Origin: Chrysemys picta bellii
Lineage: Eukaryota
Direction of reading: 5' to 3'
DNA: 64,000 nucleotides
Assembly: GCF_011386835.1 (NCBI RefSeq)
Contig: NC_088798.1
Span: 108,934,001 to 108,998,000 of the forward strand
A model generated the notes under the pieces. It did no database searches, was not told where the DNA came from, and saw only the letters and a list, made by a program, of their open reading frames with translations. Both the position numbers and the translations under genes were made by a program. Shown here piece after piece: positions 538 through 53,494 of the stretch. The stretch's first letter is position 1, and every line of letters begins with the position of its first letter.

Positions 538-1192
538 CTTACCATCCTGACCAGTAGCATCTGGAACAAAAACACAGACACAAATGACACAATGAAGGGA
601 AATGCTGGTGGGAAGGTCACTTAAGAACATTCATCTCTGTAGGACAATGCATGCAGCTTCCTCACTGGCAAATGTCACCATGGGAAGGTTCCCTACACTA
701 ACCCCAGCTGTACCGTAATGTAACTCCATGACCCTCACCGGCAGGTCTACAGCAGTGTGTGTGAGATGAGAATCAGCCCCCCGGTGAGAATGGAGATTTA
801 CAATCAGGCTAGAAAACCACAAAGGAATGTCTGAGGGAAGCATGGAGACAAATGCGCCCACAGTCAGACCCGTAAATACTATCATCATTGCCCAGGATTA
901 ACGGCAGGCGCGATTGTTTGGCGTTCCCAGAGTGGGGTTTGGGGAAAGCCCATAATGGCCCCTCAGTAACATCTTTCCAAAGGAAATGGCTGTTTCTGCC
1001 ATGAGCCACTTCCCCGCTTATGACACCCAAACGTCCACGTCTGGAGCTCGGCTGGTCTTTAACAGTCGAGCCCCGGCTGAAGGTTAGAGGGTCAGACACA
1101 GCGCTCTGTACAGGCTGCAGCAAAAGTTACTCACCCTGAAAGCTGAAGAAGAGCCCCAGAGCGAGGAACACAACGACAGCTGCTGTCTTCAT
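538..1192 (-). CDS. Kazal-type protease inhibitor gene A1 (SPINK6-like), partial: exons 1-2 only
   Basis: Exon 1 at 1135-1192 ([27 protein letters not shown], donor GTGAGT, phase 1). Exon 2 at 538-560 (TTCCAG acceptor, DATGQDGK, phase 0). Both are homologous to complete genes A2 and A5. The Kazal exon should lie left of the window. Confidence 0.85.
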
Positions 1193-1280
1193 GGTGGACG
1201 TGGTTCGTGGGTCTGAGGGAGTCTGTTAGTGCGGAGTTCTGCAGATGCTCTCCCAATGCAGCCCAAGGGAGGAGACCTCA

Positions 1281-1288
1281 TATATATA
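1281..1288 (-). promoter_or_regulatory. TATA box of A1
   Basis: TATATATA about 90 nt upstream of the ATG, conserved in A2 and A5. Confidence 0.75.
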
Positions 1289-2139
1289 GACAAGAGGTTG
1301 GGCTCTCCAACTGGATTATGAAATCCCTGTCGAAATGGTCACTGATTCTACAAACCAGTACAATGAATGGTCATTCCCTATTCCTGTTCATGATGGCTCA
1401 TTGATCATCTAAGTCAGATGTACATTTTGCTCCCTGATTAGTTGGCTAAAACTTTTCCAGCTGGAAGGTCAGGTGTGCCGAACAACAAATAACAAATACT
1501 CTTGTTCATGCATGACCATCCTTCTTGTCAGATGAGCCCAGGTGTTGGCATGAAGAATGTTCCCCATCCCTAATGCAAATAAACCTCACAATACAGGACG
1601 CTCATAAGTGGCAACTACGAAAACACTTTGGGGATTGCAATAAATATTCGTGAGGAAAGTTACATTGTTCTCACACGCATGGCTAATTCTACCGAAATGG
1701 TAAATCTTAGTACACCATTGTAGAGAGGAGAGATCATGTACATTTGGTCTATGTGTCTGTGCACTGTTGCTTGCTCAGAACAGCTGCTATGCATCACTCA
1801 CGCTAGACTATGCTATCATGCCCCAGTAACCCAGCACATTCTAGGGTCTGCGTGTCCTGTTCCTAACACACCGGCGGCTGCTTTAGTGTTCAAGCACCTG
1901 CCAGCCTGTTTGTAACAGGTCTTGGGACACTCAGGCTCAGGCAGGAGGGAGCAGATGTTTGGCAGATAAAGGTGTCTGCGCAGATGTGACAGACGTAGAC
2001 TTTCTACTTAGTACCTCACAACATGCTGACTAAAAACATTATAGATTATCATTATACAGTTAGCATGATACAATATCACTAGAGCACATGTTAAATGGAT
2101 TATTAACTGCCTATTTCATAGGCCTCAACAAGTAGTTGT

Positions 2140-2580
2140 TAAGAGGAAATAATCAGTGAATGAGGGTGGTTCTAGTGAGGTTCTGCATGGATCAGTGCTA
2201 GGCATGGCAGTCTTCGACTTTTTTCATCACTGCTCTGGAAGTGAAAAATAAAGAACTGCTGATACAATTTGTGGATGACACAAAGGTTGGAGGAGTGGCA
2301 TCTAGTGATGAGGGCAGGGCCGTCAAACAGAACCATCTGGATTGCTCTGTAAGATGTTCTGTAACATACAAAATAGGTCTTAATACAGCCAATGAAAAGT
2401 TATCCATTTGGGTCTACAGGCTGCAGGCTGGCCCTATAGAATAGGGGACAGTCTCCTGGAAAGCAGAGACTGTGAAACGGAGCTAGGGTTCATAGTGGGC
2501 AAGCAACTGAACATGAGCTGCCGGTGTAGCGAAAATGGCTAATGCGATCCTTTGACTGTAGAAGCAAGGCAGTGTAGGAG
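2140..2580 (+). mobile_element. Old CR1 LINE ORF2 fragment
   Basis: Translation LIQFVDDTKVGGVA is a degenerate form of the CR1 RT motif FADDTKLGG. Boundaries are approximate. Confidence 0.65.
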
Positions 2581-9749: not shown

Positions 9750-9755
9750 TTTATT
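9750..9755 (-). terminator. PolyA signal of A2
   Basis: AATAAA on the minus strand followed by a conserved T-rich downstream element (CCTCTGTGTTTTTTTCCCC). Confidence 0.75.
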
Positions 9756-9888
9756 GGACATGCAGGGGGATAGTCAGCCCTGGAAATGGAGGATGAGACA
9801 AGAACGTGGTTCCATGCAGGGATCTGCTGGTGGGAACTAGAAGCAAATGGCGATCGGCTCCATATCAGCGCTCGGCACCCCCGAGGAT

Positions 9889-12432
9889 TCAGCATTCTCC
9901 AAGTCGCGCAAAGCAAAGACTTCCAAGGTTTTCACTAGGGGGAAAGTCAGAGACACAGAATTCAGGGCTGCAACCCTTACGGGCAATGAGGGTAACCTTC
10001 TGTCAAGGCCCCATTATGTCACATTAACCAGAGCTTATTCGCTGACAGGAAAAATTGGACTGAGGAAGTTGACCCAGCATCTAGGAGGTAAAACAAATGG
10101 GCACAGGCAGGGGCTTGAATCACACCACAGTTATGTTTTGGTTTTTATGAATGGGCTATTTATTGCTGTAGAATCCTAGAATCACAGGACTGGAAGGGAC
10201 CTCGAGAGGTCATCTAGTCCGGTCCCCTGCCCTCATGATCTAGACTAGTGGTGAGCAACATGCGGCCCATCAGGGTAATCTGATTGCAGGCCGCGAGACA
10301 TTGTGCTGATGTTGACCGTCTGTAGGCACAGCCCCCCATAGCTCCCAGTTGGTGTGGTTCGCCGATCCCGGCCAATGCGGGAAGTGGCGGGCTGCAGGGA
10401 TGTGCTGTCTGCCGCTTCCCGCAGCTCCCATTGGCCAGGATTGGCAAACAGCAGCCACTGGGAGCTGTGGGGGGCAGGGACAATGCCTTGCCCACTACTG
10501 ATTTAGACCATCCCTGACAGGTGTTTGTCTAACCTGCTCTTAAAAATCCCCAATGATGGAGATCCCACAACCTCCCTGGGCAATTTATTTGAGTGCTTAA
10601 TTACTGCCCTTGCTGCAATTTAAGCCCATCGCTTCTTGTCCTATCCTCAGAGGTTAATTAAAACAACTTTTCTCCCTCATGCTTGTAACAACCTTTTATG
10701 TACCTGAAAACTGTTATCATGACCCCTCTCAGTTGTCTCTTTTCCAGACTAAACAAACCCAATTTTTTCCATTTTCCCTCAGAGATCTTGTTTTCTAGAC
10801 CTTTAATCATTTTTGTTGCTCTTCTCCAGTTTCTCCAGTTTTTCCCTGAAAAGTGGCATCCAGAACTGGACACAATAATCCAGTTGAGGCCGTAGCAGCG
10901 CAGAGTAGAGCAGAAGAATGACTTCTCGTGTTTTGCTTACAACAGTCCTGCTAACACATCCCAGAATGATGTCCGCTTTTTTTGCAACAGCGTTACACTG
11001 CTGACTCATATTTAGCTTGTGATCCACTCTGACCCCAGATCCCTTTCCGCAGTGCTCCTTCCTAGGCAGTCATTGCCCATTGTGTATGTGTGCAACTGAT
11101 TGTGCCTTCCTAAGTGGAGGACTTTGCATTTGTCCTTATTGAATTTCATCCTATTTACTTACAAGACTGCGCCACAAAAGGCACATTTGTTGCCGTATGT
11201 CTTGCCATCAGTGCCACAGACGGGGCGGTAGTCCAAGGTGCAGGCAGTTGGAGGACTCTTGTACTCACTGCAGAACCCCTACAAGTGAAATTCGTATCAG
11301 TGTTATTGTCTGTATTGCAGTAGAACCCTGACATTCCCATGGTGCTGGGCGTGCTGTGAACACAGAGGAAGGGACAGTCACCCCCCTCCCACCCTCAGGC
11401 TCACACTATCTTATCCTGTCCCTTGTCTCTTTCGACTGTGGTTCTGAAGCACTCACTTCCCAATTCCCCTTTCACTGCCTGGAGGAGCTGAGCCCGTCTC
11501 CCTGGTCCACGAGACTCTTCCGAACCCGCATCACAAGGTGTCTGAGCAAAGGGGTGTCTGTGCAGGCAGCAGATCCTCAAATATGAAAAATTTCATGCTC
11601 TTGTCATACCGTCCCCTGCCCCTTCTGTCTCTGAGTTGCTTTTTGTGACTCCCCCAGGCCCATCACAGACGGTGTCCTGTCCAATAGCGTATGGAGTCCA
11701 TCACTCGGACCACATGGCGTCTCAGCCCCAGGGATTCGCTCTCCCCTCACTAGGGCCTGGGGGAAGAGTCTGCTCCCACATTGACTCATGAGTTCCAGCG
11801 TGTTTCTAACCCAGAGCTCCTGGCCGCCATGATGCTACATACCAGGGATCGGGGCAAGTGACAATTGATTCACAGTGAGACTTAGACTCACCTGACCACC
11901 ATCGCCGACAGCATCTGGAAGAAAACACAGACACAAACAATACAACTAAGGGAAATGTCAGAGGGAAATCAGTTAACAACATTCATCTTTGCCTAGGACA
12001 ATGCATGCTGCTTCCTAACCAGCAACTGGGTCATGGAAAGGTTTCCTGCTCCCTCATCGAATTGTTGTGACAAATAGAAACATTGAGTGTAATGCACCGA
12101 CAGTCTGACCTGAAATACCATCACCAGGACCCACAATTAACGGCAGGCGCGATTGTTTGGAGTTCCCAGAGTGGAGTTTGGTTAAAAGCCCATAATGGCC
12201 CCTCAGTAACATCTTTCCAAAGGAAATGGCTGTTTCTGCCATGAGCCACTTCCCCGCTTATGACACCCAAACGCCCACAGCTGGAGCTCGGCTGGTCTTT
12301 AACAGTCGAGCCCCGGCTGAAGGTTAGAGGGTCAGACACAGCGCTCTGTACAGGCTGCAGCAAAAGTTACTCACCCTGAAAGCTGGAGAAGAGCCCCAGA
12401 GCGAGGAACACAACGACAGCTGCTGTCTTCAT
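9889..12432 (-). CDS. Kazal-type serine protease inhibitor A2 (SPINK6-like), 80 aa, P1=Leu
   Basis: Exons 12375-12432, 11892-11914, 11163-11278 and 9889-9934, all GT-AG, phases 1/0/2 as in SPINK genes. Protein [80 protein letters not shown]. Kazal motif, TATA box and AATAAA are present. Confidence 0.93.
10170..11155 (-). mobile_element. 5'-truncated CR1 in A2 intron 3, with a nested MITE-like segment at about 10247-10497
   Basis: [15 protein letters not shown] translation and CR1 3' end at 10170-10245; absent from the homologous introns of other paralogs. Confidence 0.85.
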
Positions 12433-12520
12433 GGTGGACGTGGGTCGTGGGTCTGCTGGAGTCTGTTAGTGCTGAGTTCTGCAGATGCTCTCCCAATGCA
12501 GCCCAAGGGAGGAGACCTCA

Positions 12521-12528
12521 TATATATA
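12521..12528 (-). promoter_or_regulatory. TATA box of A2
   Basis: TATATATA at the same spacing as in A1 and A5. Confidence 0.75.
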
Positions 12529-18425: not shown

Positions 18426-18999
18426 TCAGCATTCTCCGCCATGCTCAAAGCCAAGATTCCCGCCCCTCGCCCTACCAGGAAAGGCAGAGGTACAGAACTG
18501 ACTCAGCGCTAGATTCTTCGAGGGCAAAGAGGTCAAAACATCTGCTAAGGTCCCCATTACAGGGATGAATTAACGCTGCGCTCTTGGGCCTACCTGTGAG
18601 AAGTGAGAGTCAGACAGTTGCTACGTGGGCTACAGACTGGTCAGGAACATTTTGACGAAATGGCTTTCAATAAGGAAATGTATACATGACATTTCTTTTT
18701 GGAAAAAGAAATGGAAAAAGCGCTATCAACGCTGTCAAAATGATGAGTTCCGATTTTTCATTTAGAAATGACTTTCCATTTCGAAACTTCCTTTATTTCA
18801 TTACCACATATTTTAAAACAGTTTTTTTAAAAGGTCAAAATCAAAATGAAACATTTTGAAATTATAGAAAAAAACAAATTGTTCCTTGGGTCTAAATACC
18901 GGTGAGAATGGCCATGAACCCGAGTTCCTGCACAACTTTCTCTGTTTTTTGTGTTGATTGATGGGCTGTTTATTCCTGTACTGACACGACTGCTTTACA
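18426..18999 (-). pseudogene. Truncated relic of a divergent Kazal/SPINK gene (last 14 nt of exon 3 plus exon 4)
   Basis: 18986-18999 reads TGT AAA GCA GTC GT followed by GTCAGT. 18426-18471 follows a TAG acceptor. Spliced, this gives CKAVVARGGNLGFEHGGEC*. The flanking intron and 3' sequence are homologous to the array genes; upstream exons are absent. Confidence 0.75.
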
Positions 19000-21597: not shown

Positions 21598-21603
21598 TTT
21601 ATT
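21598..21603 (-). terminator. PolyA signal of B3
   Basis: AATAAA in the conserved context with a T-rich downstream element. Confidence 0.75.
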
Positions 21604-21701
21604 GCACAAACAGGTGGGGAGCGATGCTCTTAGCGGCCTGGAACTGGCGGATGAGACGAGAACGGGACTCCGTGCAGGGATCTGTTAGTGGGAACTAAAT
21701 G

Positions 21702-24700
21702 CTAAAGGTCATCTTTTTCCTTGGCCTCATCGTGCGACTTGCATTCTCCATAATGCTCAAAGCAAAGACTTCCAAGGTATTCACTGGAGGGAAAGACAGA
21801 GACACAGAACTCAGGGCTGCAACCTTATGGACAACGAGAGCAAAACATCTGTCAAGGCCCCAGTATGTGACATTAACCAGAGCTTATTTGCTGACAGGAA
21901 AAATTACACTGAGGAAGTCGACCCAGCCTCTAGGAGGTAAAGACATAGGCGCAGGCAGGGCCTAGAATTACCTCACAATTGTATTTTAGTTTTTGTTAAT
22001 GGGTCGTTTATTCTGTTACTTACTAGACTGCTTGGCAAAAGAAGCATTTGTTGCCATATGTCTGGCCATCAGTGCCACAAACAGGTTCATACTGCTCGGT
22101 GCAGAATTCTGGAGGCTCCTTGTACTCACTGCAGAAACCCTACAAAGAACATTAGTATTGCTATTAGAGTTATTGTCTGCATTTCAGTGGTGCCCCAACG
22201 CCCCACTTGCCTCTGAACAGAGAGGGAGGGACACTCCCTGCCCCTGGGAGCTCGCAGTACCTACTCCTGTCTCTTGTCTCCACTGACGTTCTGATGAACC
22301 GACTCCCCAATTCCCCTCTCGCTGTCAGGAGGAGCCGAGCCCGTCTCCCTGGTGTAAGAGATGTTTCTGAACCCACAGCACATGGTGTGTGAGCGAAGGG
22401 GCATCTCCGTAGGCATCAGATGCTAATCTGACATTACCCAGGGTACAAGCTGGACTGATGAACAGCTGTGTGCCCTTTTACACTGCTTTGCTAGGAAAGC
22501 AACCACTCCTATTCCTGCTCACCCACAGCCTCCAGCATGTAAATTACTCTGAGCTGTACGGCATGAGTGCTTTGGCCGGCCACTCTTGAATTACACTGCA
22601 GGGAAACACCAGCAAACTTCCAGTCCCAGACTCTCCCCCAGAAATGTGCGTCTTGTAGTGCCCAGCACCCTCCTGGACAATACAAGCTCATATAAAGTCT
22701 GTCATTTTATTAATAGAAAATGAAATGCACAAATCCTGTTGTTTCAAATGGAGTTTTCCAAACCCTTCAATCCAAACACACTGCTTTAGATAAAACAATA
22801 AAACAAGTTTCTTATCTACAGAAAGATAGATTTTAAGTGATTACAAGTAATGAGGCATCAAAGTCAGAATTGGCTACAAGAAAATAAAAGCAAAACGCCA
22901 CTAATGCCTGACTTATCAAGCTAAGTGAATTCAAAGCAAAAGGTCTCTTTCACCAAATGCTTCAGCAGTCTTACTGGGTGTCCTTTCCACCAGGACCCCT
23001 CCCCCAGTCCCGTGTTACTTTCCTTGTCCTTCAGGTATTGGTGATGTTGTGGGCAGAGAGAAAGGGAGGAGTAACTTGGGGCGTTTGTTCCCCATTCTTA
23101 TATTTTCCCCTCTTCTTTGAGCATCATCTACAGCTGGGATTCATGCGACAGAAAGTTTGTGGGGATGGGAACCTCCAGCTGTTCCTTTGCCAACAAGTAA
23201 ATTTCTCGCTCACAACTTTTTTCCTGCCAAAGAATGGCCATGTAACCATGTTAGGGTCACTTTGATTATGTTGAGACCTGGCTGAGGTGTGAGTTTGTCT
23301 TTTGTCTCTGGTTTATAGCTGTTTCCCCAGACTGGGAACATGTCTTATAGAGCAGAATCTTATAACTTTACATACAATGTTGCCTCACAGATTTAACAGG
23401 ACAATAATAATGTTCAGCACATGATGAGTGTTCAAAGATACCTCACAAGGCATACTTTCTAAAAAAGGTATCATAATCTTGTAAAAGGGGTGAACATAGG
23501 GGTACAGACTGTCACACCCTGGTCTAAGAGATGCTTCTGAACCTGCATCATATAGAATGTGAGTGAAAGAGAATCTCCACAGGCAGCAGATGCTCATAAA
23601 TCAAAAACCTCATGCTCTTGTCACACCGTCCCCTCCTCTGCTCTGTCTCAGTTGCTCCCTGTGTCTCCCCCAGGCCCATCACAGACGGACCTGTACAATA
23701 GCGTAGGGAATCCATCCCCCTGACCCCATGGCTTACGTCTACTCAGCAGTGAGACACCCCTGGCTAGCTCCGCTCAGCTGACGTGGGCTCGGGCTGTGCA
23801 ATTGCTGTGTAGACATTCGGGCTTGGGCTGGAGCCTGAGGTTTGGTACCCCACGAGGGGGGAGAGTCCCCGAGCCTGAACATCTACACAGCCATTTTGAG
23901 CCCTGCAGCCCACGCCCCCCAAGCTCGAGTCAGCTGATCCGGTCCAGCTATGGACGGGCCTTGGGTCTTTGTTCCAGTGTAGACATACCCATGGGTTCTC
24001 AGCCCCAGAGATTCACTCTCCCCTGGCTAGGGCACTGGGTACAGTCTACTTCTGCTCTGAGTCATCAGTTCTAGCGTGTTTCTAACCCAGAGATTGTGGT
24101 CCCTGTGATGCTACAAACCAGAGACTGGGGAAAGTGACTATTAATGAACAGGGAGAGTTCGACTTACCGTACCAGCCTGGCCAGCAGCATCTGGAACAAA
24201 ACATACAGACAGAATGAGACTCTTTCAGATTCTCTCTCCCATTCTGGTGCTGGGGTTATCCATGTCCCTAGTTCTGACCAAGTCTCTCTCTTTACTTCTA
24301 CTATCTTGGTGGGGGGATCACCTGCAGAGCCCGAGAGGGCCAGTGTGATGGTGTCTGCACAGAGAATGACCGACACTGTCTCCTGGCAACTGATGGCCTG
24401 GGCCCCTCCCCTGCACAGGTGCCAACTGAAGGTGTTGGAGAACAAAGAGATCAGGTGGCCTCCTGGCCTGGGAAAGAGACAAAGGCAGAGGAGGTGCTGG
24501 AGAGTTTCAGTTGGGAGCTGGCTGGGGAATTGGAGGGAGCCCCAGGACTGGGGTCTAAGCTCCCTGCCCCCCAGAAGGACCTGACTGAGGGGTCCTGGGT
24601 GTACCTACAAGCCCTGCTTGGAACTGTGTTCCTGTTGGCCAATAAACCTTCCGTTTTACTGGCTGGCTGAGAGTCCTGGTGCATCGCAGGAAGTGGGGGT

Positions 24701-26968: not shown

Positions 26969-27045
26969 GGCGGACGTGGCTGTCTGGTCTGCACTGGGCT
27001 CTTGGTGCTCCGCTCCCTCAGTAAACCCCACAGACAGAGCCCCAC

Positions 27046-27053
27046 TATATATA
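27046..27053 (-). promoter_or_regulatory. TATA box of B3
   Basis: TATATATA about 78 nt upstream of the ATG, conserved in B4 and B6. Confidence 0.75.
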
Positions 27054-38411: not shown

Positions 38412-38417
38412 TTTATT
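38412..38417 (-). terminator. PolyA signal of B4
   Basis: AATAAA in the conserved context. Confidence 0.75.
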
Positions 38418-38520
38418 GCACAGACAGGTGGGGAGTCAGCGATGCTGTCAGGAGCCCTGCAAATGGAGGATGAGACGAGACTGTGGCTCCATGCAGGGAT
38501 CTGCTGGTGGGAACTAAATG

Positions 38521-41500
38521 CTAAAGGTCTTCTCTTTCCTTGGCCTCGTCTTGCGACTTGCATTCTCCATAATGCGCAAAGCAAAGACTTCCAAGGTATT
38601 CACTGGAGGGAAAGACAGAGACACAGAACTCAGGGCTGCAATCCTTATGGACAGTGAGAGCAAAGCATTTGTCAAGGCCCCAGTATGTGACATTAACCAG
38701 AGCTTATTGGCTGACAGGAAAAATTACACTGAGATAGTCGACCCAGCCTCTAGGAGGTAAAGACACAGACGCAGGCAGGGCCTTGAATTACCTCACAATT
38801 GTATTTTAGTTTTTGTTAATGGGCCGTTTATTCTGATACTTACTAGACTGATGAACAAAAGTCACATTTGTTGCCATATGTCTGGCCATCAGTGCCACAG
38901 ATAGGGTTGTATTCCCTGGTGCAGCCTTTCGGAGGCTCCTTGTACTCACTGCAGAAACCCTACAAAGAACATTAGTGTTGCTATTAGAGTTATTGTCTGC
39001 ATTTCAGTGGTGCCCCAACGCCCCACTTGCCTCTGAACAGAGAGGGAGGGACACTCCCTGCCCCTGGGAGCTCGCAGTACCTACTCCTGTCCCTTGTCTC
39101 CACTGACGTTCTGATGAACCGACTCCCCAATTCCCCTCTCTCTGTCAGGAGGAGCCGAGCCTGTCTCCCTGGTGTAAGAGATGTTTCTGAACCCACAGCA
39201 CATGGTGTGTGAGCGAAGGGGCATCTCCGTAGGCATCAGATGCTAATCTGACATTACCCAGGGTACAAGCTGGACTGATGAACAGCTGTGGGCCCTTTTA
39301 CACTGCTTTGCTAGGAAAGCAACCACTCCTGTTCCTGCTCACCCACAGCCTCCAGCATGTAAATTACTCTGAGCTGTACGGCATGAGTGCTTTGGCCGGC
39401 CACTCTTGAATTACACTGCAGGGAAACACCAGCAAACTTCCAGTCCCAGACTCTCTCCCAGAAATGTGTGTCTTGTAGTGCCCAGCACCCTCCTGGACAA
39501 TACAAGCTCATATAAAGTCTGTCATTTTATTAATAGAAAATGAAATGCACAAATCCTGTTGTCTCAAATGGAGTTTTCCAAACACTTCAATCCAAACACA
39601 CTGCTTTAGATAAAACAATAAAACAAGTTTCTTATCTACAGAAAGATAGATTTTAAGTGATTACAAGTAACGAGGCATCAAAGTCAGAATTGGGTACAAG
39701 AAAATAAAAGCAAAACACCACTAATGCTTGACTTATCAAGCTAAGTGAATTCAAAGCAAAAGGTCTCTTTCACCAAATGCTTCAGCAGTCTTACTGGGTG
39801 TCCTTTCCACCAGGACCCCTCCCCCAGTCCCATGTTACTTTCCTTGTCCTTCAGGTGTTGGTTTTGTCGTGGGCAGAGAGAAAGGGAGGAGTAACTTGGG
39901 GCGTTTGTTCCCCATTCTTATATTTCCCCCTCTTCTTTGAGCATCATCTCCAGCTGGGATTCATGCGACAGAAAGTTTGTGGGGATGGGAACCTCCAGCT
40001 GTTCCTTTGCCAACAAGTAACTTTCTTGCTCACAACTTTTTACCTGCCAAAGAATGGCCACATAACCACATGATGGTCCATTTGATTATGTTGAGACCGG
40101 GCTGAGGCATCAGTTTGTCTTTTGTCTCTCATTTATGGCTGTTCTCCCAGACTGGGTACATGTCTTATAGAGTAGAATCTTATAACTTTACATACAATGT
40201 TGCCTCACATACTTAACAGGACAATAATGTTCAGCACATTATGAGTTTTCAAATGATACCTCACAAGGCATTCTTTGTACAAAATTTATCATAGTCTTGT
40301 AAAAGGGATGAATATAGGGGTACATACTGTCATACCCGGTCTAAGAGATGCTTCTGAACCCGCATCGTATAGAGTGTGAGTGAAAGAGCATCTCCACAGG
40401 CAGCAGATGTTCAAATATAAAAACCCTCATGGGGGAGGGTCCCAGAGCCCGAACATCTACACAGCCATTTTTAGCCTGCAGCCCACGCCCCCCAAGCTCA
40501 AGTCAGCTGATCCGGTCCAGCCCTGGACGGGCCCTGGGTCTTTGTTCCAGTGTAGACGTACCCATGGGTTCTCAGCCCCAGAAATTCACTCTCCGCTGGC
40601 TAGGGCACTGGGTACAGTCTACTTCTGCTCTGAGTCATGTGCTTTCATAGGTTTCTAACCAGAAATCTCTAAAACCAGAGATTGGGGAAAGTGACTATTA
40701 ATGAACAGGGAGAGTTCGACTTACCTTACCAGCCTGGCCAGCAGCATCTGGAACAAAACAGAATGAGATTGTTTCAGATTCTCTCTCCCATCCTCGTGCT
40801 GGGGTTATTGATGTCCCTAGTTCTGACCAAGTCTTTCTCTTTACTTTTATACAGAGCCTTTTCAAATGTTCTGGTACGGGGTTGTGCCACTAGGGATGTC
40901 AACTCTTGTACCACCTGTATTCACTGAATTGAGATCACAAAGGAGGAACGGGCAAACATTCTTGGTGCTTTCCATAGTGATCCTATTCTAGGCAGGTGTC
41001 TCCTCTACAGGACCTCACCCTCGCCTTTGGGGGAGGTGGGGAGTTTCCTACTTTTCCAGGAACTTCTGAGAAGATCTCAGTGCTATTTGTTTTAACCCTT
41101 CTCCTTCTGGATGAAGGGTAACATTGTATCTACTCATTAAATTCAGTGAAAGGGTTCAGAAAACATTCATGTTGTCAGCAAGACAATCATAAAAATGCAA
41201 AGAAATGTCTTTTTTCTTTCTTTAGAGTTTCATGGTCGATCAGTTCAACCATATAGCGGGATCATGGCTGTGTTAAGCCACCCATAATAAAACAACATCC
41301 ACAGGTTGATCACATCTTTAGCTTTTGAAACACAGGCCCCTGCCATTTGAGCTGAAGAAATCGCTCTGTTAGCTGCCATAATACTCTGATGTTCTTTCAA
41401 AACTACACCCAGCCAACAGAGGCCAAAAAATGTCCATTGACACCAGTGGTAGCAGGATTAGACCCCAAACTATCCACAACAAAAGTGGTTAATGGCTTTG

Positions 41501-43309
41501 CTTTAAAACGCCTGTTATGGAGTACTGCATTTCAGAGGCATTTCATACCACAGCCACTTTTCTGTCATTCGGTTCACCTGTTCTCAACAGGCTGTCTGGT
41601 CCATTCATTGACACTGTCTGGTGCTGGCCTCTGACATTGGACTTCACTTCAGGTATCTTTGTTGTTCCCTGATCTCTCTGTAAGTGTGAGGGGTTTCCTG
41701 GTTTTGCTTCTTGAGCCTGCTCATTAGAGGCTCTGTTGGGAAACTTGTGATCTGGGTATTCAGGAGTTAATTTTCAAAAAGCCAACCTAGAGCACTAGGG
41801 ATTGAATTGTGCCTCGCTGCCTTCGGGAGCAGCCTGCTTTGTCTCTCTCTGTGTTTTGGGTTCTTGTACATTAAGGTTCTGGATTCTGAGAAATCATGTC
41901 GTATTATATTACAAGGATACAGAAAGAGAGTTTTACATTTTACTCTAACATCCATTTGGATGGTATGAACATAACACTGCACACTCCGCCAGGTACCCCA
42001 CAACAGGCTGTCTGGTCCATTCATTGCCTCTGTCTGAAAAATACCAGAACACTAAAGGTTGTGTCTCAGCAGCTGTTTTGCAGGATCCAGGATCTCACGG
42101 GCAGCCAATAAAACCTCAGCAGCTTTTGACTCTCTCTCTCTCTCTCCATTATTTGAGTGTCTCTTCCGAGTCAAGCCATAGCACAGAATTACATCAGCAA
42201 TTACTCAATTCTAATGCGATGTTTCATTCGGAACAGGTCTGACTGTTTGTTAATGAACTTAACAATCCAATTGACTAAGATATCAGTCCCCCAAGTGAAG
42301 ATTATCTGTATTAAGGAGCTCTGGATAACGGGATCATTCAGCATTACAAGGTAGGGATTTAACCAAAAAAAGCAAGTGTTTGGAGAGGATCTAAATCTTC
42401 TAATTTCTACTTTGGCAATGCCATAGAGCTTGTCATGCTAATAAAGTATCGTTGACTTGAATTAATTCAGGGCATGAAGCAACTCCTAAGTAATACAAGG
42501 TAAGAAGAAATTTTTGCTGTGGGAAGCTTCTCTCAGAACTGCCGAGGGCCTTGTACATCGCTCTAAATACACTGGCATAGGCTAGTGTTGGAAACAGAGA
42601 TTGGGTAGCTGGGTGCCTGGTCTGATCCCGAGTGGGAATTTTTGATTCTTGATGCTAAGGTGACTAGATAAAAAGTGTGAAAAATCCGGACGGGAATGGG
42701 GGCTAATAGGCACCTATATAAGAAAAAGCCCCGAATATTGGGATTGTCCCTATAAAATCAGTACATTTGGTCACCGTACCTGATGGCCTCTTTGTGGAGT
42801 TTCATAATAAACAATGACAGGAATTAAAATTATTTAAACAACTGGATCAAGAATTTTACTGCCAACCACCTCAACCTCAACAAAATAATCAGAAAACAAC
42901 CAGAACGGTAAATGAGAAGAAATTCAGAAAGAAAGGGGATTCCATGGATGTTTGGTTTCTAGGAGCTGTGAATCAGTTTCTGGCAGAGTCAGTGATATCC
43001 CAGCCCAGAGAGAACCCCGGGAACAGCCCTTCCGAGCTCTGGGATCGGTGCAGGGAGGTTAGAGCTCCTACAATCAGCTCAATGTCCAGGCTGTGCAGTG
43101 GCATCTCAGAAATAAACCAGCTGCTCCTGGAATCAGCCACTGTGGGGATGTGCGAACCCCTGTATAGATCAGAGTGAGGCTGGCCCCGACCTTTCAGGGG
43201 GCAGAGGTATCAGAGCAGGGCTCAGCACAGGCTACAATAAAAGTGACTCACCCGAGTAGAAGCAGCAAAGTGCCAGAGCGAAGAGCAGAATGGCCCCTGT
43301 TATCTTCAT
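38521..43309 (-). CDS. Kazal-type serine protease inhibitor B4, 92 aa, P1=Arg, C-terminal REDL
   Basis: Exons 43252-43309, 40725-40747, 38844-38959 and 38521-38602. Protein [92 protein letters not shown]. Confidence 0.93.
39248..40334. mobile_element. LTR-like insertion in B4 intron 2
   Basis: Near-identical to 22428-23517. Confidence 0.6.
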
Positions 43310-43386
43310 GGCGGACGTGGCTGTCTGGTCTGCACTGGGCTCTTGGTGCTCTGCTCCCTCAGTAAACCCCACAGACAGAGCCCCAC

Positions 43387-43394
43387 TATATATA
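43387..43394 (-). promoter_or_regulatory. TATA box of B4
   Basis: TATATATA at the conserved spacing. Confidence 0.75.
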
Positions 43395-45254: not shown

Positions 45255-45260
45255 TTTATT
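45255..45260 (-). terminator. PolyA signal of A5
   Basis: AATAAA in the conserved context. Confidence 0.75.
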
Positions 45261-45403
45261 GGACATGCAGGGGGATAGTCAGTGATGCTGTCAGGAGCCC
45301 TGGAAATGGAGGATGAGAACGTGGCTCCATGCGGGGATCTGCTGGTGGGAACTAGAAGCAAATGGGGGTCAGCTCCATATCAACGCTCGGCACCCCTGAG
45401 GAT

Positions 45404-47201
45404 TCAGCATTCTCCCAGTCGCGCAAAGCAAAGACTTCCAAGGTTTTCACTAGGGGGAAAGTCAGAGACACAGAACTCAGGACTGCAACCCTTACGGGCA
45501 ATGAGAGTAACCTTCTGTAAGGGCCCCAGTCAAATAACCAAATAACCAGAGCCCTTTTGCTGACAGGAAAAATTAGACTAAGTTTACCCAGCCTCCAGGA
45601 GGTAAAGACAGAGGGGCGCAGGCAAGGGCTTGAATTACATCATAATTCTGTTTTCATTTTTATGAATAACCTATTTATTCTGTAAAAAGTGACAGAGAGT
45701 CCTGTGGCACCTTATAGACTACAGACGTATTGGAGCATAAGCTTTCGTGGGGGAATACCCACTTCGTCATTCATGAGGTTGATGGATTTCCACTCCATAT
45801 GGCTAAATGCAGTGCCTTGCGTGGTGTCAAGTATCAGAGGGGTAGCCGTGTTAGTCTGGATCAATGTATTTATTCTGTTACTTACAAGACTTCTTTGCAA
45901 AAGAAGCATTTGTTGCTGTGTGATCTGCCATCAGTGCCACAAACAGGACTGTACTCCCGGGTGCAGGCAGATGGAGGCCTCTGGTACTCACTGCAGAAAC
46001 CCTACAATGGTGTTAATATCACTGTCAATGTTATTGCCTGTATTGCAGTAGTGCCCCGACGTTCCCCTGGTGCTGGGTGTGCTGTGAACACAGAGGAACG
46101 GACAGTCCCTGCCCTCAGAGCTCACAGTCTAATCCTGTCTCTCGTCTCCTTCGTGGTTCTGATGAACTGACTTCCCAATTCCCCTCTCGCTGCCAGGGGG
46201 AGCCGAGCCCGTCTCCCTGGTCCACAAGACTCTTCCGAACCCGCATCACAAGGTATCTGAGCAAAGGGGTGTCAATGCAGGCAGCTGATGCCCAAATATA
46301 AAGAACCTCATGTTCTTGTGATACTGTCCCCTCCCCCGTTCCATCTCTGAGCTGTTCCCAGTGCCTCCCCCAGGCCCATCACAGACCGTGTCCTGTCCAG
46401 TAGTGTATGAAGTCCGTCCCTCGGACCACATGGCGTCTCAGCCCCAGGGATTCGCTCTCCCCTCACTAGGGCCTGGGGGAGAGTCTGCTCCCACATTGAC
46501 TCATGAGTTCCAGCGTGTTTCTAACCCAGAGCTCCTGGCCGCCATGATGCTACATACCAGGGATCGGGGCAAGTGACAATTGATTGACAGTGAGACTTAG
46601 ACTCACCTGATGACCTTGGCCGACAGAGTCTGAAAGAAAACAGACACAAAGGACACAACTAAGGGAAATGTCAGAGGAAAATCAGCTAAAAACATTTAGC
46701 TCTGCCTATGACGACGGATGCAAATTGCTAACCAGCAACTGGGCCACGGGAAGGAGTCCTGCACTCTCATCCAGTTGCTGTGATAAATAGAAACATGGGG
46801 AGTAATGCACCCACAGTCTGACCTGAAAGCACAGAAGATTAGGGTTGGAAGAGACCTTTGGAGGTTATCTAGTCCAACCCCCGAATACTATCACTGGGCC
46901 TACAATTAACTGCAGGCGCGATTGTTTGGAGTTCCCAGAGTGGAGTTTGGTTAAAAGCCCATAATGGCCCCTCAGTAACATCTTTCCAAAGGAAATGGCT
47001 GTTTCTGCCATGAGCCACTTCCCCGCTTATGACACCCAAACGTCCATAACTGGTGCTCGGCTGGTCTTTAACAGTTGAGCCCCGGCTGAAGGTTAGAGGG
47101 TCAGACACAGCGCTCTGTACAGGCTGCAGCAAAAGTTACTCACCCTGAAAGCTGGGGACGAGCCCCAGAGCGAGGAACACAACGACAGCTGCTGTCTTCA
47201 T
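45404..47201 (-). CDS. Kazal-type serine protease inhibitor A5, 80 aa, P1=Arg
   Basis: Exons 47144-47201, 46607-46629, 45886-46001 and 45404-45449. Protein [80 protein letters not shown]. Confidence 0.92.
45684..45862 (-). mobile_element. Penelope fragment in A5 intron 3
   Basis: Homology to the Penelope terminus and ORF start (MEWKSINLM); TATTTATTCTGT is duplicated at 45672-45683 and 45867-45878. Confidence 0.85.
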
Positions 47202-47289
47202 GGTGGACGTGGTTCGTGGGTCTGCTGGAGTCTGTTAGTGCTGAGCTCTGCAGATGCTCTCCCAATGCAGCCCAAGGGAGGAGACCTCA

Positions 47290-47297
47290 TATATATA
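47290..47297 (-). promoter_or_regulatory. TATA box of A5
   Basis: TATATATA at the conserved spacing. Confidence 0.75.
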
Positions 47298-49772: not shown

Positions 49773-49778
49773 TTTATT
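49773..49778 (-). terminator. PolyA signal of B6
   Basis: AATAAA in the conserved context. Confidence 0.75.
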
Positions 49779-49926
49779 GGACATGCAGGGGGATAGTCAG
49801 CGACGCTGTCAGGAGCCCTGGAAATGGAGGATGAGAAGAGAACGTGGCTCCATGCGGAGATCTGCTGGTGGGAACTAGAAGCAAATGGGGTTCGGCTCCA
49901 TATCAGCGCTCGGCACCCCCAAGGAT

Positions 49927-52900
49927 TCAGCATTTTCCATGTCGCGCAAAGCAAAGACTTCCAAGCTTTTCACTAGGGGGAAAGAGAGACACAGAACTCA
50001 GGGCTGCAACCTTATGGACAACGCGGGTAAAGCTTCTGTCAAGGCCCCAGTGTGTCAAATAAGCAAAGCCCTTTTGCTGACATGAAAAATTAAACTGAGG
50101 AACTTGACCCGGCCTCTAGAAGATAAAGACAGATGGGTGAAGGCCGGGGCTCGAATTACATCACAGTTGTATTTTGTTTTTTATGAATGGGCCATTTATT
50201 CTGTTACTTACTAGACTGCTTTGCAGAAGTAGCATTTGTTGCTGTATGTTTTCCCATCAGTGCCACAAACAGGGTTGTACTCCTCAGTGCAGACAGATGG
50301 AGGCTTCTTGTACTCACTGCAGAAACCCTTCAAAGAACATTAGTATTGCAGTTAGTGTTATTGTCTGCATTTCAGTAGTGCCCCGACGCCACCTCCCCCC
50401 CGCCAGGCTGGGCATTCTCTGAACACAGAGGACCCTGGGAGCTCGCAGTACCTGCTCCTGTCCCTTGTCTCCACTGACGTTCTGATGAACCGACTCCCCA
50501 ATTCCCCTCTCGCTGCCAGGAGGAGCCGAGCCCGTCTCCCTGGTGTAAGAGACGTTTCTGAACCCACAGCACATGGTGCGTGAGCGAAGGGGCATCTCCA
50601 CAGGAAACTCTTTTGTTCCAGTGTAGACGTACCCATGGGTTCTCAGCCCCAGAGATTCACTCTCCCCTGGCTAGGGCACGAGGTAGAGTCTGCTCCTGCT
50701 TTGACTCATCAGTTCTAGCGTGTTTCTAACCCAGAGATCGTGGTCTCTGTGATGCTACAAAGCAGAGACTGGGGAAAGTGACTATTAATGAACAGGGAGA
50801 GTTTGGCTTACCTTACCAGCCTGGCCAGCAGCATCTGGAACAAAACACAGACAGAAACGATACAATGAAGGGAAATGCTGGAGTCAGTTAAGAACATTCA
50901 TCCCTGTGTAGGACAATGCATGCAGCTTCCTAACCAGCACAAGAAGTATTAGCAAGAAGTGTCATGCTTACAACAGTCCTGCTAACACACCCCAGAATGA
51001 TGTTCTCTTTTTTTGCAACAGCGTTACACTGCTGACTCATATTTAGCTTGTGATCCACTATGACCCCAGATCCCTTTCCGCAGTGCTCCTTCCTCGGCAG
51101 TCATTGCCCATTTTGTATGGGTGCAACTGATTGTTCCTTCCTAAGTGGAGTACTTTGCTTTTGTCCTTATTGAATTTCATCCTATTTACTTCATTCTCCA
51201 GTTTGTCTAGATCATTTTGAATTTTCATCCTAACCTCCAAAGCACTTGCAACCCCTCCCAGCTTGGTATCGTCCACAAACTTTATAAGTGTGCTCTCTGT
51301 GCCATTATTGAAATCATTGATGAAGATATTGAGCAGAACCAGACCCAGGACCAATCCCTGTGGGACCCCACTCGATATGCGCTTCTGGCTTTATTGTGAA
51401 CCACTGATAACTACTCTCTTAGAATGATTTTCCAACCAGTTATGAACCCACATTATAGTAGCTCCATCTAGGTTGCATTTCCCTAGTTTGTTAATGAGGT
51501 CATGCGAGACAGTATCAAAAGCCTCACTAACGTCAAGATATACCACGCCTACCGCTTCCCCCCATCCACAAGGCTTGTTACCCTGTCAAAGAAAGCTATC
51601 AGGTTGGTTTGACAAGATTTGTTCTTGACAAATCCATGCTGTCTGCTACTTATCACCTTATCATCTTCTAGGTGTTGGCAAATTGATTGCTTAATTATTT
51701 CCTTCATTATCTTTCCGGATACTGATGTTAAGCTGACTGGTCTGTAATTTCCCAGTTGTCTTAAGCAACCTATATTAAAACAACATCCACCTGTTGGTCT
51801 CATCTTTAGCTTTTGAAACGCAGGCCCCTGTCACTTCAGTCTAAGGACTAGCCCTGTTAGCTGCCAGCTCTAGTAATGCCCTGATGTTCTTTCAAAGCAA
51901 CATCGAGCCAACGGAGGCCAAAAAATGTCCATTGATATCAGTGGAAGCAGGATTAGACCCAAGCTATTCACAACAAAAATGGTTAATGGCTTTGCTTTAA
52001 AACGCCTGTTATGGAGTAGTGCATTTCAGCGGTATTTAATACCACAGCCACTATTCTGCCATTCATTTGTCCTGTGCTCCTCTGGCGCTGGCCTCTGACA
52101 TTGGACTCCACTTCAGGTGTCTTTGTTGTTCCCTGATCTCTCTTTAAGTTTGAAGGGTTTCCTGGCCCTGCTCATTAGTGGCTCTATTAGGAAACATGTG
52201 ATCTGGGTCTTCAGCAGTCACACTGCAAAGAGGCAGCCTAGCGCAACATGGGTTGCCCTGTGCCTCATTGCCTTTGGGAGCAGCCTGCTTTGTCACTCTC
52301 TGTTTTTTGGGTTCTTGTACATTTGGGTTCTGGATTCTAAGATATAAAGTCATATTATATCGCAAGCTTCCAGAAAGAGAAATTTACATTTTTATCGAAC
52401 ATCTGTTTGGATGCTGTGAACATAACACTGCACACTCCGCCATGTACCCCACAAAGGCTGTCTGGTTCATTCATTGACACTGTCTGAAAAATATCAAAAA
52501 AACTAAAGGTTGTGTCTCAGCAGCTGTTTTGCAGGATCCATGACCTCACCAAAAGCCGTAAAAACCTAGGCAGCTATCTCCTATCTCTCTCCTCTATTTG
52601 CGTGTGTCCTCAAAATTAAGTCATAGCAAAGAATTGCATCAGCAATTTCTCCAGTGTAATGAGATGTTTCATTCTGAACATCTGGCTCTGTCTTTTAACG
52701 AAACTGTATCCAGTTCACTAAGATATCATCCCCCCAAGTGAAGATTATCTGTATCAAGGAGCTCTGGATAACAAGGTCATCCAGCATTACAAAGTAGGGA
52801 TTAAAAAAAACGTATTTGGAAAGGATCTAAACCCTCCTGTTTTATACTTTGGCAATGCTGTACATGTTGTCATGCTAATTAAGTATCCTTGAATTGAATT

Positions 52901-53409
52901 AATTTAGGGCATAAAGCAACTCCTAAGTAATAGAAGCTAAGAAGAAACTTTTCCTGCGGGCAGGTTTTCTCAGCTTCTCTCTCAGCCAGAACCAGAGATG
53001 AGAAGAAATTTAGAAAGAAAGGGGATTCCATGGATGTTTGGTTTCTAGGGGCTGTGAATCTTTTCAGCTGCCTCGGTTTCTGGCAGAGTCAGTGATATCC
53101 CAGCCCAGAGAGAACCCCGGGAACAGCCCTTCCGAGCTCTGGGATCGGTGCAGGGAGGTTAGAGCTCCTACAATCAGCTCAACGTCCAGGCTGTGCAGTG
53201 GCATCTCAGAAATAAACCAGCGGCTCCTGGAATCAGCCACTGTGGGGATGTGTGAACCCCTGTATAGATCAGAGTGAGGCTGGTCCCGACCTTTCAGGGG
53301 GCAGAGGTATCAGAGCCGGGCTCAGCACAGGTTACAGCAAAAGTGACTCACCTGAGTAGAAGCAGCAAAGTGCCAGAGCGAAGAGCAGAACGGCCCCTGT
53401 TATCTTCAT
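49927..53409 (-). CDS. Kazal-type serine protease inhibitor B6, 80 aa, P1=Glu
   Basis: Exons 53352-53409, 50812-50834, 50212-50327 (AAG acceptor) and 49927-49972. Protein [80 protein letters not shown]. Confidence 0.9.
50945..51760 (-). mobile_element. CR1 ORF2 fragment in B6 intron 1
   Basis: [10 protein letters not shown] and FVDDTKLGG translations. Confidence 0.85.
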
Positions 53410-53486
53410 GGCGGACGTGGCTGTCTGGTCTGCACTGGGCTCTTGGTGCTCTGCTCCCTCAGTAAACCCCACAGACAGAGCCCCAC

Positions 53487-53494
53487 TATATATA
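53487..53494 (-). promoter_or_regulatory. TATA box of B6
   Basis: TATATATA at the conserved spacing. Confidence 0.75.

What the first reader, a model, noticed from the sequence alone, without database searches (positions are those of the whole stretch)
538..53494. Hidden tandem array of micro-exon Kazal inhibitor genes with a diversified reactive-site repertoire
Seen: five complete genes, one partial gene and one relic share the 58/23/116/46-82 nt, phase 1/0/2 architecture with intact splice sites, TATA boxes and polyA signals. P2-P2' sequences are TLDY, TEQY, TREY, TREY and TEEY. Established: P1 is the second residue after Cys2 and largely sets Kazal specificity (Leu for chymotrypsin/elastase types, Arg for trypsin types). 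The length (80 aa) and C-x9-C spacing resemble SPINK6. Inference: a lineage-specific expansion covering several protease classes, possibly for skin, mucosal or egg defence.
Basis: partly seen in the sequence, partly recalled or inferred. Interest (0 to 1): 0.75.

Follow-up and report, generated by a model that had tools for sequence, protein, structure and literature searches.

The report
Annotated turtle Kazal protease-inhibitor gene array
This stretch of painted-turtle DNA holds a real tandem row of small Kazal-type protease-inhibitor genes with varied specificity residues, but it is an ordinary SPINK-type cluster that public annotation already lists as 'ovomucoid-like' in this genome and across turtles.

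Summary
On the minus strand lie five complete four-exon genes (58/23/116/46 or 82 nt, phases 1/0/2), one gene cut by the window edge and one decayed relic. All have GT-AG introns, TATA boxes and AATAAA signals. P2-P2' reads TLDY, TEQY, TREY, TREY, TEEY. Every exon 3 passes Pfam Kazal_1. The nearest solved structure is the ovomucoid third domain (model rmsd 1.0 A), not SPINK6. One RNA-type contig joins exons 1-2-3 of the first complete gene exactly as modelled.

The array is not hidden. The genome is Chrysemys picta bellii. Three models are 100% identical to RefSeq XP_065412121-3 ('ovomucoid-like'), a fourth gene is called at its place, and the edge gene matches XP_023962558. Only one copy (45255-47297) is uncalled. 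Relatives are annotated in about 20 turtle species. The exon plan is that of human SPINK1.

What remains of interest:
- The subfamily looks turtle-restricted.
- Protease-contact positions are hypervariable (P1 = L, K, E, M, R, F, I).
- Nearly all members carry a seventh cysteine.
- One group has a KDEL-like tail.

Other first-reader notes of this scan, on this same stretch, had already raised the tail, the cysteine and the exon/intron contrast. Interest is low to moderate.

The parts
538..1288 (-). g0, a partial gene. TATA at 1288; exon 1 coding part 1192-1135; exon 2 560-538. Exons 3-4 lie beyond the left edge of the window.
   Evidence: The first 27 residues are identical to RefSeq XP_023962558.2 of Chrysemys picta bellii (82 aa, P2-P2' TKDF).
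9750..12528 (-). g1, a complete gene of 80 aa, P2-P2' TLDY (P1 Leu). TATA 12528; exons 12432-12375, 11914-11892, 11278-11163, 9934-9889; AATAAA 9755-9750.
   Evidence: One search gives the model. Kazal_1, 51 bits; 100% identical to XP_065412121.1; an RNA-type contig joins exon 3, exon 2 and exon 1 with 0 mismatches; the model fits OMTKY3 at rmsd 1.0 A.
18426..18471 (-). Relic of an exon 4. It reads ..GGNLGFEHGGEC followed by a stop, and the extra Cys is lost.
18961..18996 (-). Relic of the 3' end of exon 3 and the start of intron 3. The Kazal core upstream of it is no longer recognisable.
21598..27053 (-). g2, a complete gene of 92 aa, P2-P2' TEQY (P1 Glu), with an acidic tail ending KDDL. TATA 27053; exons 26968-26911, 24190-24168, 22139-22024, 21783-21702; AATAAA 21603-21598.
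   Evidence: 100% identical to XP_065412122.1.
38412..43394 (-). g3, a complete gene of 92 aa, P2-P2' TREY (P1 Arg), with a tail ending REDL. TATA 43394; exons 43309-43252, 40747-40725, 38959-38844, 38602-38521; AATAAA 38417-38412.
   Evidence: 100% identical to XP_065412123.1; called in GCA_011386835.2.
45255..47297 (-). g4, an intact 80-aa reading frame, P2-P2' TREY (P1 Arg). The conserved Tyr of the GxTY motif is His here. TATA 47297; exons 47201-47144, 46629-46607, 46001-45886, 45449-45404; AATAAA 45260-45255. It is the only copy not called in the public annotation.
   Evidence: It is not among the called genes. No matching RefSeq protein appeared. Its exons occur only in fused UniProt models. 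It sits on a long branch.
49773..53494 (-). g5, a complete gene of 80 aa, P2-P2' TEEY (P1 Glu). TATA 53494; exons 53409-53352, 50834-50812, 50327-50212 (acceptor ttgaAG), 49972-49927; AATAAA 49778-49773.
   Evidence: an 80-aa Kazal gene is called at this place; orthologues in Trachemys (96%) and Emys (95%).

Best explanation
The window holds part of the SPINK-type gene cluster of the western painted turtle, Chrysemys picta bellii. It is a head-to-tail row of single-domain Kazal genes made by repeated tandem duplication. Each gene has its own TATA promoter, signal-peptide exon, short linker exon, a Kazal exon carrying Cys1-Cys5 and the reactive-site loop, and a last exon carrying Cys6.

The products are most likely secreted canonical ('standard mechanism') serine-protease inhibitors. 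The loop around Cys2-Thr-P1 sits in the protease active site like a substrate, and P1 sets the target class:
- g1 (P1 Leu, 61% identical to the turkey ovomucoid third domain) should inhibit elastase-, chymotrypsin- and subtilisin-type enzymes.
- g0 (Lys), g3 and g4 (Arg) should inhibit trypsin-like enzymes.
- g2 and g5 (Glu) should inhibit Glu-specific, probably microbial, endopeptidases, or be weak inhibitors.

After duplication the protease-contact positions diversified while the scaffold, introns and other exons stayed similar.

Shown here: the gene structures, the Kazal membership and fold, splicing of g1, identity with annotated proteins, the turtle-wide distribution, and the concentration of variation at contact positions.

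Inferred: secretion, inhibitory activity, the target classes, and selection as the cause of the variation.
For: - Gene models with intact signals.
- Pfam Kazal_1 for all five exon 3 translations.
- Nearest solved chains are ovomucoid third domains (E about 1e-13).
- AlphaFold model of the g1 protein has pLDDT 88-96 over residues 31-80. It superposes on OMTKY3 complexes with rmsd 1.0 A over 51 columns at 61% identity.
- Spliced contig in run X1 lies on 11163-11277 and 12375-12456 with 0 mismatches. The 24 letters between match the last base of exon 3 plus the 23-nt exon 2. A joint 11277>11891 is listed.
- g1, g2 and g3 equal XP_065412121.1, XP_065412122.1 and XP_065412123.1. g0 matches XP_023962558.2. 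A gene is called at g5.
- Same exon phases as human SPINK1.
- 63 distinct turtle cores were compared. Mean column entropy is 1.64 bits at the 11 non-Cys consensus contact positions against 0.82 elsewhere (Mann-Whitney p = 0.012). P3', P18', P4 and P1 are among the five most variable columns.
- Between g2 and g3, exon 3 differs at 20 of 116 nt against 16 of 900 nt in the intron upstream. All 20 differences fall in nt 29-59 (the reactive loop) and nt 95-108 (the P18' region).
Against: - No activity, secretion or tissue data exist here.
- The RNA evidence is one low-depth contig (depth 3.6) from a run whose RNA status is only a guess, and it covers g1 only.
- Pairwise dN/dS for the Kazal part is mostly below 1 (0.35-1.23). 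Positive selection is therefore not formally shown.
- Synonymous divergence in exon 3 is also high, so gene conversion of the flanks could explain part of the contrast.
- The seventh cysteine, and the KDEL-like tails of g2 and g3, do not fit a plain secreted six-cysteine inhibitor.
- P1 Glu is unusual for inhibitors of vertebrate proteases.
- g4 is not called by the public annotation and sits on a long branch.
Confidence: 0.82

Rival explanations
1. The array is a hidden, previously unrecognised gene family.
For: - One copy (g4) is not called in the public annotation.
- UniProt/Ensembl-type models of this genome fuse neighbouring genes wrongly: g5 with g4, and g2 with g1.
- No paper on a turtle SPINK array turned up.
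Against: - g0, g1, g2, g3 and g5 are called in GCA_011386835.2 or RefSeq as 'ovomucoid-like'.
- Dozens of orthologues and paralogues are annotated in about 20 turtle species, both Cryptodira and Pleurodira.
Confidence: 0.03
2. g4, and possibly other copies, is a young pseudogene or a non-inhibitory copy. The repertoire would then be smaller than five.
For: - g4 is not called.
- No RefSeq match appeared in a word search that would have found one.
- The best annotated relative is only 77.5% identical.
- It has a long end branch of 0.28.
- The conserved Tyr is replaced by His.
- A decayed relic nearby shows that copies do die in this array.
Against: - The reading frame, all six splice sites, the TATA box and the AATAAA signal are intact.
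- Kazal_1 scores 48.9 bits.
- His at the same position occurs in the natural first domain of turkey ovomucoid (alignment).
- dN/dS against g1 in exon 3 is 0.48, which is not neutral.
Confidence: 0.3
3. The 92-aa copies g2 and g3 are not secreted defence inhibitors. They would be retrieved to the endoplasmic reticulum through their C-terminal KDDL and REDL ends and act inside the secretory pathway, or be released only under stress.
For: - Tails ending [KR][EDGN][ED]L or VEEL occur in about 27 of 67 distinct turtle proteins, from Emydura (Pleurodira) to sea turtles and softshells, so the tail is old and conserved.
- REDL is the working KDEL-receptor motif of CRELD2, and RTDL that of MANF (PMC10018036).
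Against: - Neither KDDL nor REDL fits the strict [KRHQSA][DENQ]EL pattern (pattern cited from own knowledge).
- No localisation data exist.
- Such weak motifs allow secretion, as with CRELD2.
- The last four residues vary (RNEL, RGDL, KGDL, VEEL).
Confidence: 0.3
4. The excess divergence of exon 3 over its introns reflects concerted evolution rather than positive selection for new specificities. Gene conversion or unequal crossing-over would homogenise introns, promoters and the other exons, while exon 3 keeps an older divergence.
For: - Synonymous divergence in exon 3 of g2 against g3 is also high: about 6 of 22 sites against 1.8-5% in the introns.
- Similarity is mosaic. Exon 1 with its flanks is 100% identical between g2 and g5 over 118 nt, while their intron 1 differs by 29%.
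- The 5' halves group g1 with g4 and g2 with g3 and g5. The 3' ends group g1, g4 and g5.
- Sea-turtle paralogues cluster by species.
Against: - The differences are not spread over exon 3. They sit in two short contact segments.
- Family-wide variability peaks at contact positions.
- Conversion alone does not predict either pattern. The two processes can act together.
Confidence: 0.4

Closest known systems
RefSeq 'ovomucoid-like' proteins of Chrysemys picta bellii (XP_065412121.1, XP_065412122.1, XP_065412123.1, XP_023962558.2) and their turtle orthologues
   Same: Identical sequences for g1, g2 and g3, and the same first 27 residues for g0. Orthologues of g5, g3 and g1 are found in Trachemys and Emys at 92-99% identity.
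   Different: g4 has no annotated counterpart. The names are automatic, and no function has been published for any of them as far as my searches reach.
Turkey/pheasant ovomucoid third domain (OMTKY3, OMSVP3; PDB 1cho, 1ppf, 3sgb, 2ovo)
   Same: - Best sequence and fold match: E about 1e-13, rmsd 1.0 A, 59-61% identity.
- Both have the CSEY start, and a CTL(E/D)Y reactive site with P1 Leu in g1.
- Both show hypervariable contact residues. The classic avian result is cited from own knowledge (Laskowski and co-workers).
   Different: - Ovomucoid is one polypeptide of three Kazal domains. These are single-domain genes, each with its own signal peptide.
- The Cys1-Cys2 spacing is 9 residues rather than 7.
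- There is a seventh Cys at the position aligned to Thr49 of OMTKY3 (OMTKY3 numbering from own knowledge; sequence comparison).
- Some copies carry an acidic tail.
Mammalian SPINK1/SPINK6-type genes (the single-Kazal SPINK cluster on human 5q32)
   Same: - A four-exon plan with phases 1/0/2. SPINK1 coding exons end at c.55, c.87 and c.194.
- A precursor of about 80 aa, tandem clustering, and a similar signal peptide (signal-peptide similarity from own knowledge).
- SPINK6 shares the C-x9-C spacing, aligning without a gap.
   Different: - SPINK6 is a weaker match than the ovomucoid third domain (7e-10 against 1e-13; fold rank 34).
- A separate 'SPINK6-like' protein of Emydura falls outside the turtle family in the tree, so one-to-one orthology with SPINK6 is not shown.
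KDEL-like retrieval ends of CRELD2 (REDL) and MANF (RTDL)
   Same: g3 ends in REDL, the same four residues that the KDEL receptor recognises in CRELD2.
   Different: The proteins are unrelated. No localisation data exist for the turtle proteins. g2 ends in KDDL, for which I found no test.

Membership tests
Kazal-type serine protease inhibitor domain (Pfam PF00050, MEROPS I1) | Profile match above the curated threshold | tested here: met
   All five exon 3 translations score 48.9-54.5 bits on Kazal_1 (cut-off 21), although exon 3 holds only two thirds of the domain.
Kazal-type serine protease inhibitor domain (Pfam PF00050, MEROPS I1) | Six cysteines spaced C1-x(n)-C2-x7-C3-x10-C4-x2-C5-x17-C6 | tested here: met
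   All five models and 67 distinct relatives fit the pattern with n = 9. An additional seventh Cys lies between C5 and C6.
Kazal-type serine protease inhibitor domain (Pfam PF00050, MEROPS I1) | Kazal fold (short helix packed on a small sheet, exposed reactive loop) | tested here: met
   The model of the g1 protein has pLDDT 88-96 over the domain. It fits OMTKY3 at rmsd 1.0 A with TM (target) 0.82-0.90. This is a prediction, not a solved structure.
Kazal-type serine protease inhibitor domain (Pfam PF00050, MEROPS I1) | Tight, substrate-like inhibition of a serine protease through the P1 residue | not testable with these tools
   Needs Ki measurements on recombinant domains.
Kazal-type serine protease inhibitor domain (Pfam PF00050, MEROPS I1) | Secretory signal peptide | tested here: inconclusive
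   Exon 1 encodes a hydrophobic N-terminus of two types, [14 protein letters not shown].. and [14 protein letters not shown]... No signal-peptide predictor was available, so the cleavage site is unknown.
SPINK1-type gene architecture | Four coding exons with intron phases 1, 0, 2, and Cys6 on the last exon | tested here: met
   The turtle genes are 58/23/116/46(82) nt. Human SPINK1 coding exon ends at c.55, c.87 and c.194 give the same phases (PMC3190254).
SPINK6 orthologue | Closest relative is SPINK6, grouping with SPINK6 in a tree | tested here: inconclusive
   - The spacing is the same and some automatic names say 'SPINK6-like'.
- However, the ovomucoid third domain scores better.
- Anolis SPINK6 and an Emydura 'SPINK6-like' protein fall outside the turtle clade in a poorly resolved tree.
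- Synteny was not tested.
Ovomucoid proper | Three tandem Kazal domains in one polypeptide | tested here: not met
   Each gene has one domain and its own promoter, signal exon, stop codon and poly(A) signal. The fused two-domain UniProt models are artefacts that join neighbouring genes.
KDEL-type ER retrieval signal | C-terminal tetrapeptide recognised by the KDEL receptor (strict pattern [KRHQSA][DENQ]EL, from own knowledge) | tested here: inconclusive
   g2 ends KDDL and g3 ends REDL. Neither fits the strict pattern, but REDL works in CRELD2. The tail is conserved across turtles.

The most novel reading that the evidence does not exclude
Turtles evolved their own SPINK subfamily. A conserved seventh, probably unpaired, cysteine and, in one orthologue group, a KDEL-like tail would change how a canonical Kazal inhibitor is deployed: disulfide-tethered or dimeric, or held in the ER and released on demand. 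Conserved P1-Glu members would be aimed at Glu-specific microbial proteases. None of this has been described.
Probability: 0.2. Interest if true: 0.5.

Novelty: already known. Interest (0 to 1): 0.25.

Why it matters
As a discovery of genes it adds little, because the array is already in the public annotation. It still has four modest uses.
- It corrects fused two-domain 'Ovomucoid' models of this locus in UniProt.
- It points to one intact but uncalled copy (g4).
- It gives a clean natural example of hypervariable protease-contact residues. Two sister genes differ ten times more in the reactive-site exon than in the intron upstream of it.
- It flags three turtle-wide features that nobody seems to have studied: a seventh cysteine, a KDEL-like tail, and conserved P1 Glu. 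All three could be tested with simple expression and inhibition assays.

Tried and rejected
- The exhaustive profile search with the five exon 3 translations was swamped by multi-Kazal proteins whose scores add up. Only P0138, a fused model of this locus, was useful.
- P0138 has no gene on record in the contig collection.
- Tandem Repeats Finder found nothing, because the units are too long and too diverged.
- Pairwise Nei-Gojobori dN/dS did not exceed 1 for the Kazal part except in g2 against g4. I therefore do not claim demonstrated positive selection.
- A first count on the five window copies alone, by eye on alignment A4, gave 7 of 12 contact columns variable against 8 of 26 others. I judged five sequences too few to test and did not run a test on them. 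The 63-sequence entropy test was used instead.
- Open reading frames in 53.4-64 kb and at 27.5-28 kb have no Pfam match. I saw no other gene upstream of g5 in the window.
- Three literature searches found no paper on turtle SPINK arrays. The one hit is a cardiac proteome preprint that lists an 'ovomucoid-like isoform X1' and cannot be tied to any of these genes.
- Joined spliced models were built only inside scripts, from window coordinates. They were used for translation, divergence counts and local comparison with fetched proteins. 

Full report
**What is in the sequence**

A six-frame motif scan found Kazal cores only on the minus strand. Self-comparison showed repeated gene-sized units. 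Pattern searches and alignments then located all the exons. One search lists five complete models:
- g1: 12432-9889
- g2: 26968-21702
- g3: 43309-38521
- g4: 47201-45404
- g5: 53409-49927

Coding exons are 58, 23, 116 and 46 nt, with an 82-nt last exon in g2 and g3, and phases are 1/0/2. Every intron is GT..AG. A TATATATA box lies 85 or 96 nt before each ATG, and AATAAA lies 98-148 nt after each stop.

A sixth gene, g0, has exon 1 at 1192-1135 and exon 2 at 560-538 and runs off the left edge. Between g1 and g2 lies a relic. It consists of an exon-4-like piece at 18471-18426 and a remnant of the exon 3 end and intron 3 start near 18996-18961.

P2-P2' reads TLDY, TEQY, TREY, TREY, TEEY in the order g1 to g5.

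**What the genes are**

All five exon 3 translations match Pfam Kazal_1 at 49-54 bits against a cut-off of 21. Against solved structures, the best single-domain matches are turkey and pheasant ovomucoid third domains at E about 1e-13. SPINK6 scores 7e-10 and SPINK1 scores 1e-6 to 1e-9.

The alignment to OMTKY3 needs a two-residue gap before Cys2.

An AlphaFold model of the database protein identical to g1 has pLDDT 88-96 over the domain. It superposes on OMTKY3 in its protease complexes at rmsd 1.0 A over 51 columns with 61% identity.

The exon plan is not special to this locus. Variant names for human SPINK1 (c.55+961, c.87+1G>A, c.194+2T>C) put its coding exon ends at 55, 87 and 194, giving the same phases 1/0/2 (PMC3190254).

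**Whose genome it is, and whether the array is already annotated**

The exhaustive profile search was dominated by multi-domain proteins. It did return a 101-aa protein that strings together exon 3 of g5 and exons 3-4 of g4. That protein is UniRef A0A8C3F3C8, named 'Ovomucoid', from Chrysemys picta bellii.

Word searches seeded with this protein, and then with an alignment of annotated relatives, found many turtle proteins of 80-95 aa named 'ovomucoid-like' or 'SPINK6-like'. Cluster listings gave the accessions.

Local comparison gave these results:
- g1 equals XP_065412121.1.
- g2 equals XP_065412122.1.
- g3 equals XP_065412123.1. All three are 100% identical over full length.
- The first 27 residues of g0 equal XP_023962558.2.
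- g5 is 96% identical to a Trachemys protein and 95% to an Emys protein.

The contig look-up places g3 at CM062325.1:108.96 Mb of assembly GCA_011386835.2. It shows an 80-aa Kazal gene called at the position of g5, and nothing called at g4. So the array is annotated except for g4.

UniProt also carries wrong models that fuse g5 with g4 and g2 with g1.

**Expression**

Run X1 (RNA by guess, organism coded) contains a 230-nt contig that lies on 11163-11277 and on 12375-12456 with no mismatch. The 24 letters between these pieces have the length of the last exon 3 base plus the 23-nt exon 2. A joint 11277>11891 with GT..AG ends on the minus strand is listed.

That is a spliced exon 1-2-3 transcript with exactly the modelled borders, plus at least 24 nt of 5' UTR. 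Depth is low (3.6) and nothing can be said about tissue. The other copies were not tested.

**Family and evolution**

In the alignment search, the listed proteins scoring above 114 bits are all turtle proteins, from both Cryptodira and Pleurodira. Birds, lizards and mammals follow at 114 bits and below.

Among 67 distinct single-domain cores, one of them from a bird:
- All have the nine-residue Cys1-Cys2 spacing.
- P1 is L (19), K (18), E (11), M (9), R (7), F (2) or I (1).
- 61 carry a seventh cysteine ten residues after Cys5.
- About 27 carry an acidic tail ending [KR][EDGN][ED]L or VEEL.

The seventh-cysteine pattern occurs in 86 of the 327 proteins fetched, all of them from turtles.

The tree has few columns and many open forks, but several groupings stand out:
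- g3 pairs with Trachemys (100/94).
- g5 pairs with Emys (100/90).
- g1 pairs with Emys (96/75).
- A clade holds all proteins with the MKTAAVVV-type signal (99/99).
- Within it, a g0-type P1-Lys clade reaches Emydura (99/99).
- Sea-turtle 92-aa paralogues cluster by lineage.

The expansion is therefore turtle-wide and old, with later local duplications or homogenisation. The window's genes have one-to-one annotated orthologues in related emydids, except g4.

**Variation at contact residues**

Over 63 distinct turtle cores, column entropy averages 1.64 bits at the consensus protease-contact positions of ovomucoid third domains (P6-P3', P14', P15', P18'; this position list is from my own knowledge of Laskowski's work). 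Elsewhere it averages 0.82 bits (p = 0.012). P3', P18', P4 and P1 are among the five most variable columns.

Between the sister genes g2 and g3:
- Exon 3 differs at 20 of 116 nt.
- The 900 nt of intron upstream differ at 16 nt (1.8%).
- Intron 3 differs at 5%.
- The 20 exon differences fall only in nt 29-59 and nt 95-108, which are the reactive loop and the P18' region.

This confirms another first-reader note for the upstream intron, where the contrast is about tenfold.

Two things temper the reading. Pairwise dN/dS stays mostly below 1, and synonymous differences in the exon are also raised. Similarity along the genes is also mosaic. For example, exon 1 with its flanks is identical between g2 and g5 while their first introns differ by 29%. 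Selection for new specificities and homogenisation of the flanks by conversion probably both contribute. I cannot separate them here.

**Mechanism**

The most likely function is canonical inhibition, with P1 setting the target class, as given under the best explanation. g1 is close to a textbook elastase, chymotrypsin and subtilisin inhibitor.

Three features depart from the textbook:
- The odd cysteine. In copies with the MKTAAVVV signal it has no possible partner within the chain.
- The KDEL-like tails of g2 and g3. REDL is the working retrieval motif of CRELD2.
- P1 Glu, which is conserved in Trachemys, Emys and Mauremys.

These are leads, not findings.

**Surroundings**

A nearly intact non-LTR retrotransposon lies between g1 and the relic, on the minus strand. 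It has an 813-aa frame with endonuclease and reverse transcriptase domains at 15777-13336, and a 335-aa frame with a GDSL-type domain at 16829-15822. Reverse-transcriptase fragments lie at 9487-8558 and 4964-6906. No other gene was seen in 53.5-64 kb.

**Verdict**

**Method note**

Joined spliced models were built only inside scripts.

Noticed in passing
window 13336-17742 (minus); fragments at 8558-9487 (minus) and 4964-6906 (plus): A nearly intact non-LTR retrotransposon lies between g1 and the relic. One 813-aa frame has endonuclease and reverse transcriptase domains. An upstream 335-aa frame has a GDSL-lipase-like domain. Truncated reverse-transcriptase pieces lie nearby. It may have destroyed the relic gene or helped the duplications.
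   Followed up: partly
window 45404-50327 and 9889-22139: UniProt models of this genome named 'Ovomucoid' (A0A8C3F3C8, A0A8C3F4K5, A0A8C3F3B0, A0A8C3F2I7) join the Kazal exons of neighbouring genes (g5 with g4, g2 with g1) into false two-domain proteins.
   Followed up: yes
window 9889-9934, 21702-21783, 38521-38602, 45404-45449, 49927-49972 (exon 4 of each gene): A seventh cysteine (LGSLCF) lies ten residues after Cys5. It is present in 61 of 67 distinct family cores, and in 86 fetched proteins that are all from turtles. In copies with the MKTAAVVV signal it has no partner in the chain.
   Followed up: partly
window 21702-21740 and 38521-38559: g2 and g3 carry acidic 12-residue tails ending KDDL and REDL. 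Similar tails occur in sea turtles, snapping turtle, softshells and the side-necked Emydura. REDL is the retrieval motif of CRELD2.
   Followed up: partly
window 26881-26998 and 53322-53439: Exon 1 with 30-nt flanks is 100% identical between g2 and g5, while their first introns differ by about 29%. This suggests a local conversion tract or strong constraint on the signal-peptide exon.
   Followed up: no
window 22080-22090 (g2 exon 3, P3' codon): The UniProt fused model A0A8C3F2I7 reads TEQYD where the window and RefSeq read TEQYE. This is a difference between assemblies or alleles at a protease-contact residue.
   Followed up: no
window 10142-11211 (intron 3 of g1): An interspersed repeat is covered at very high summed depth by short contigs of all four runs at 95-99% identity. 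This accounts for most of the words those runs share with the stretch.
   Followed up: no
window 12478-12619: A 213-nt contig of run X2 lies across the g1 TATA box and upstream region with 3 mismatches, including C>T at 12551. It may come from a paralogous promoter (g0 or g4), from DNA in the run, or from an upstream start.
   Followed up: no
not placed in the window: A painted-turtle cardiac proteome preprint (10.1101/2021.02.03.429598) lists 'ovomucoid-like isoform X1' as raised in cold-acclimated hatchlings. Which gene that is cannot be told from the text.
   Followed up: no
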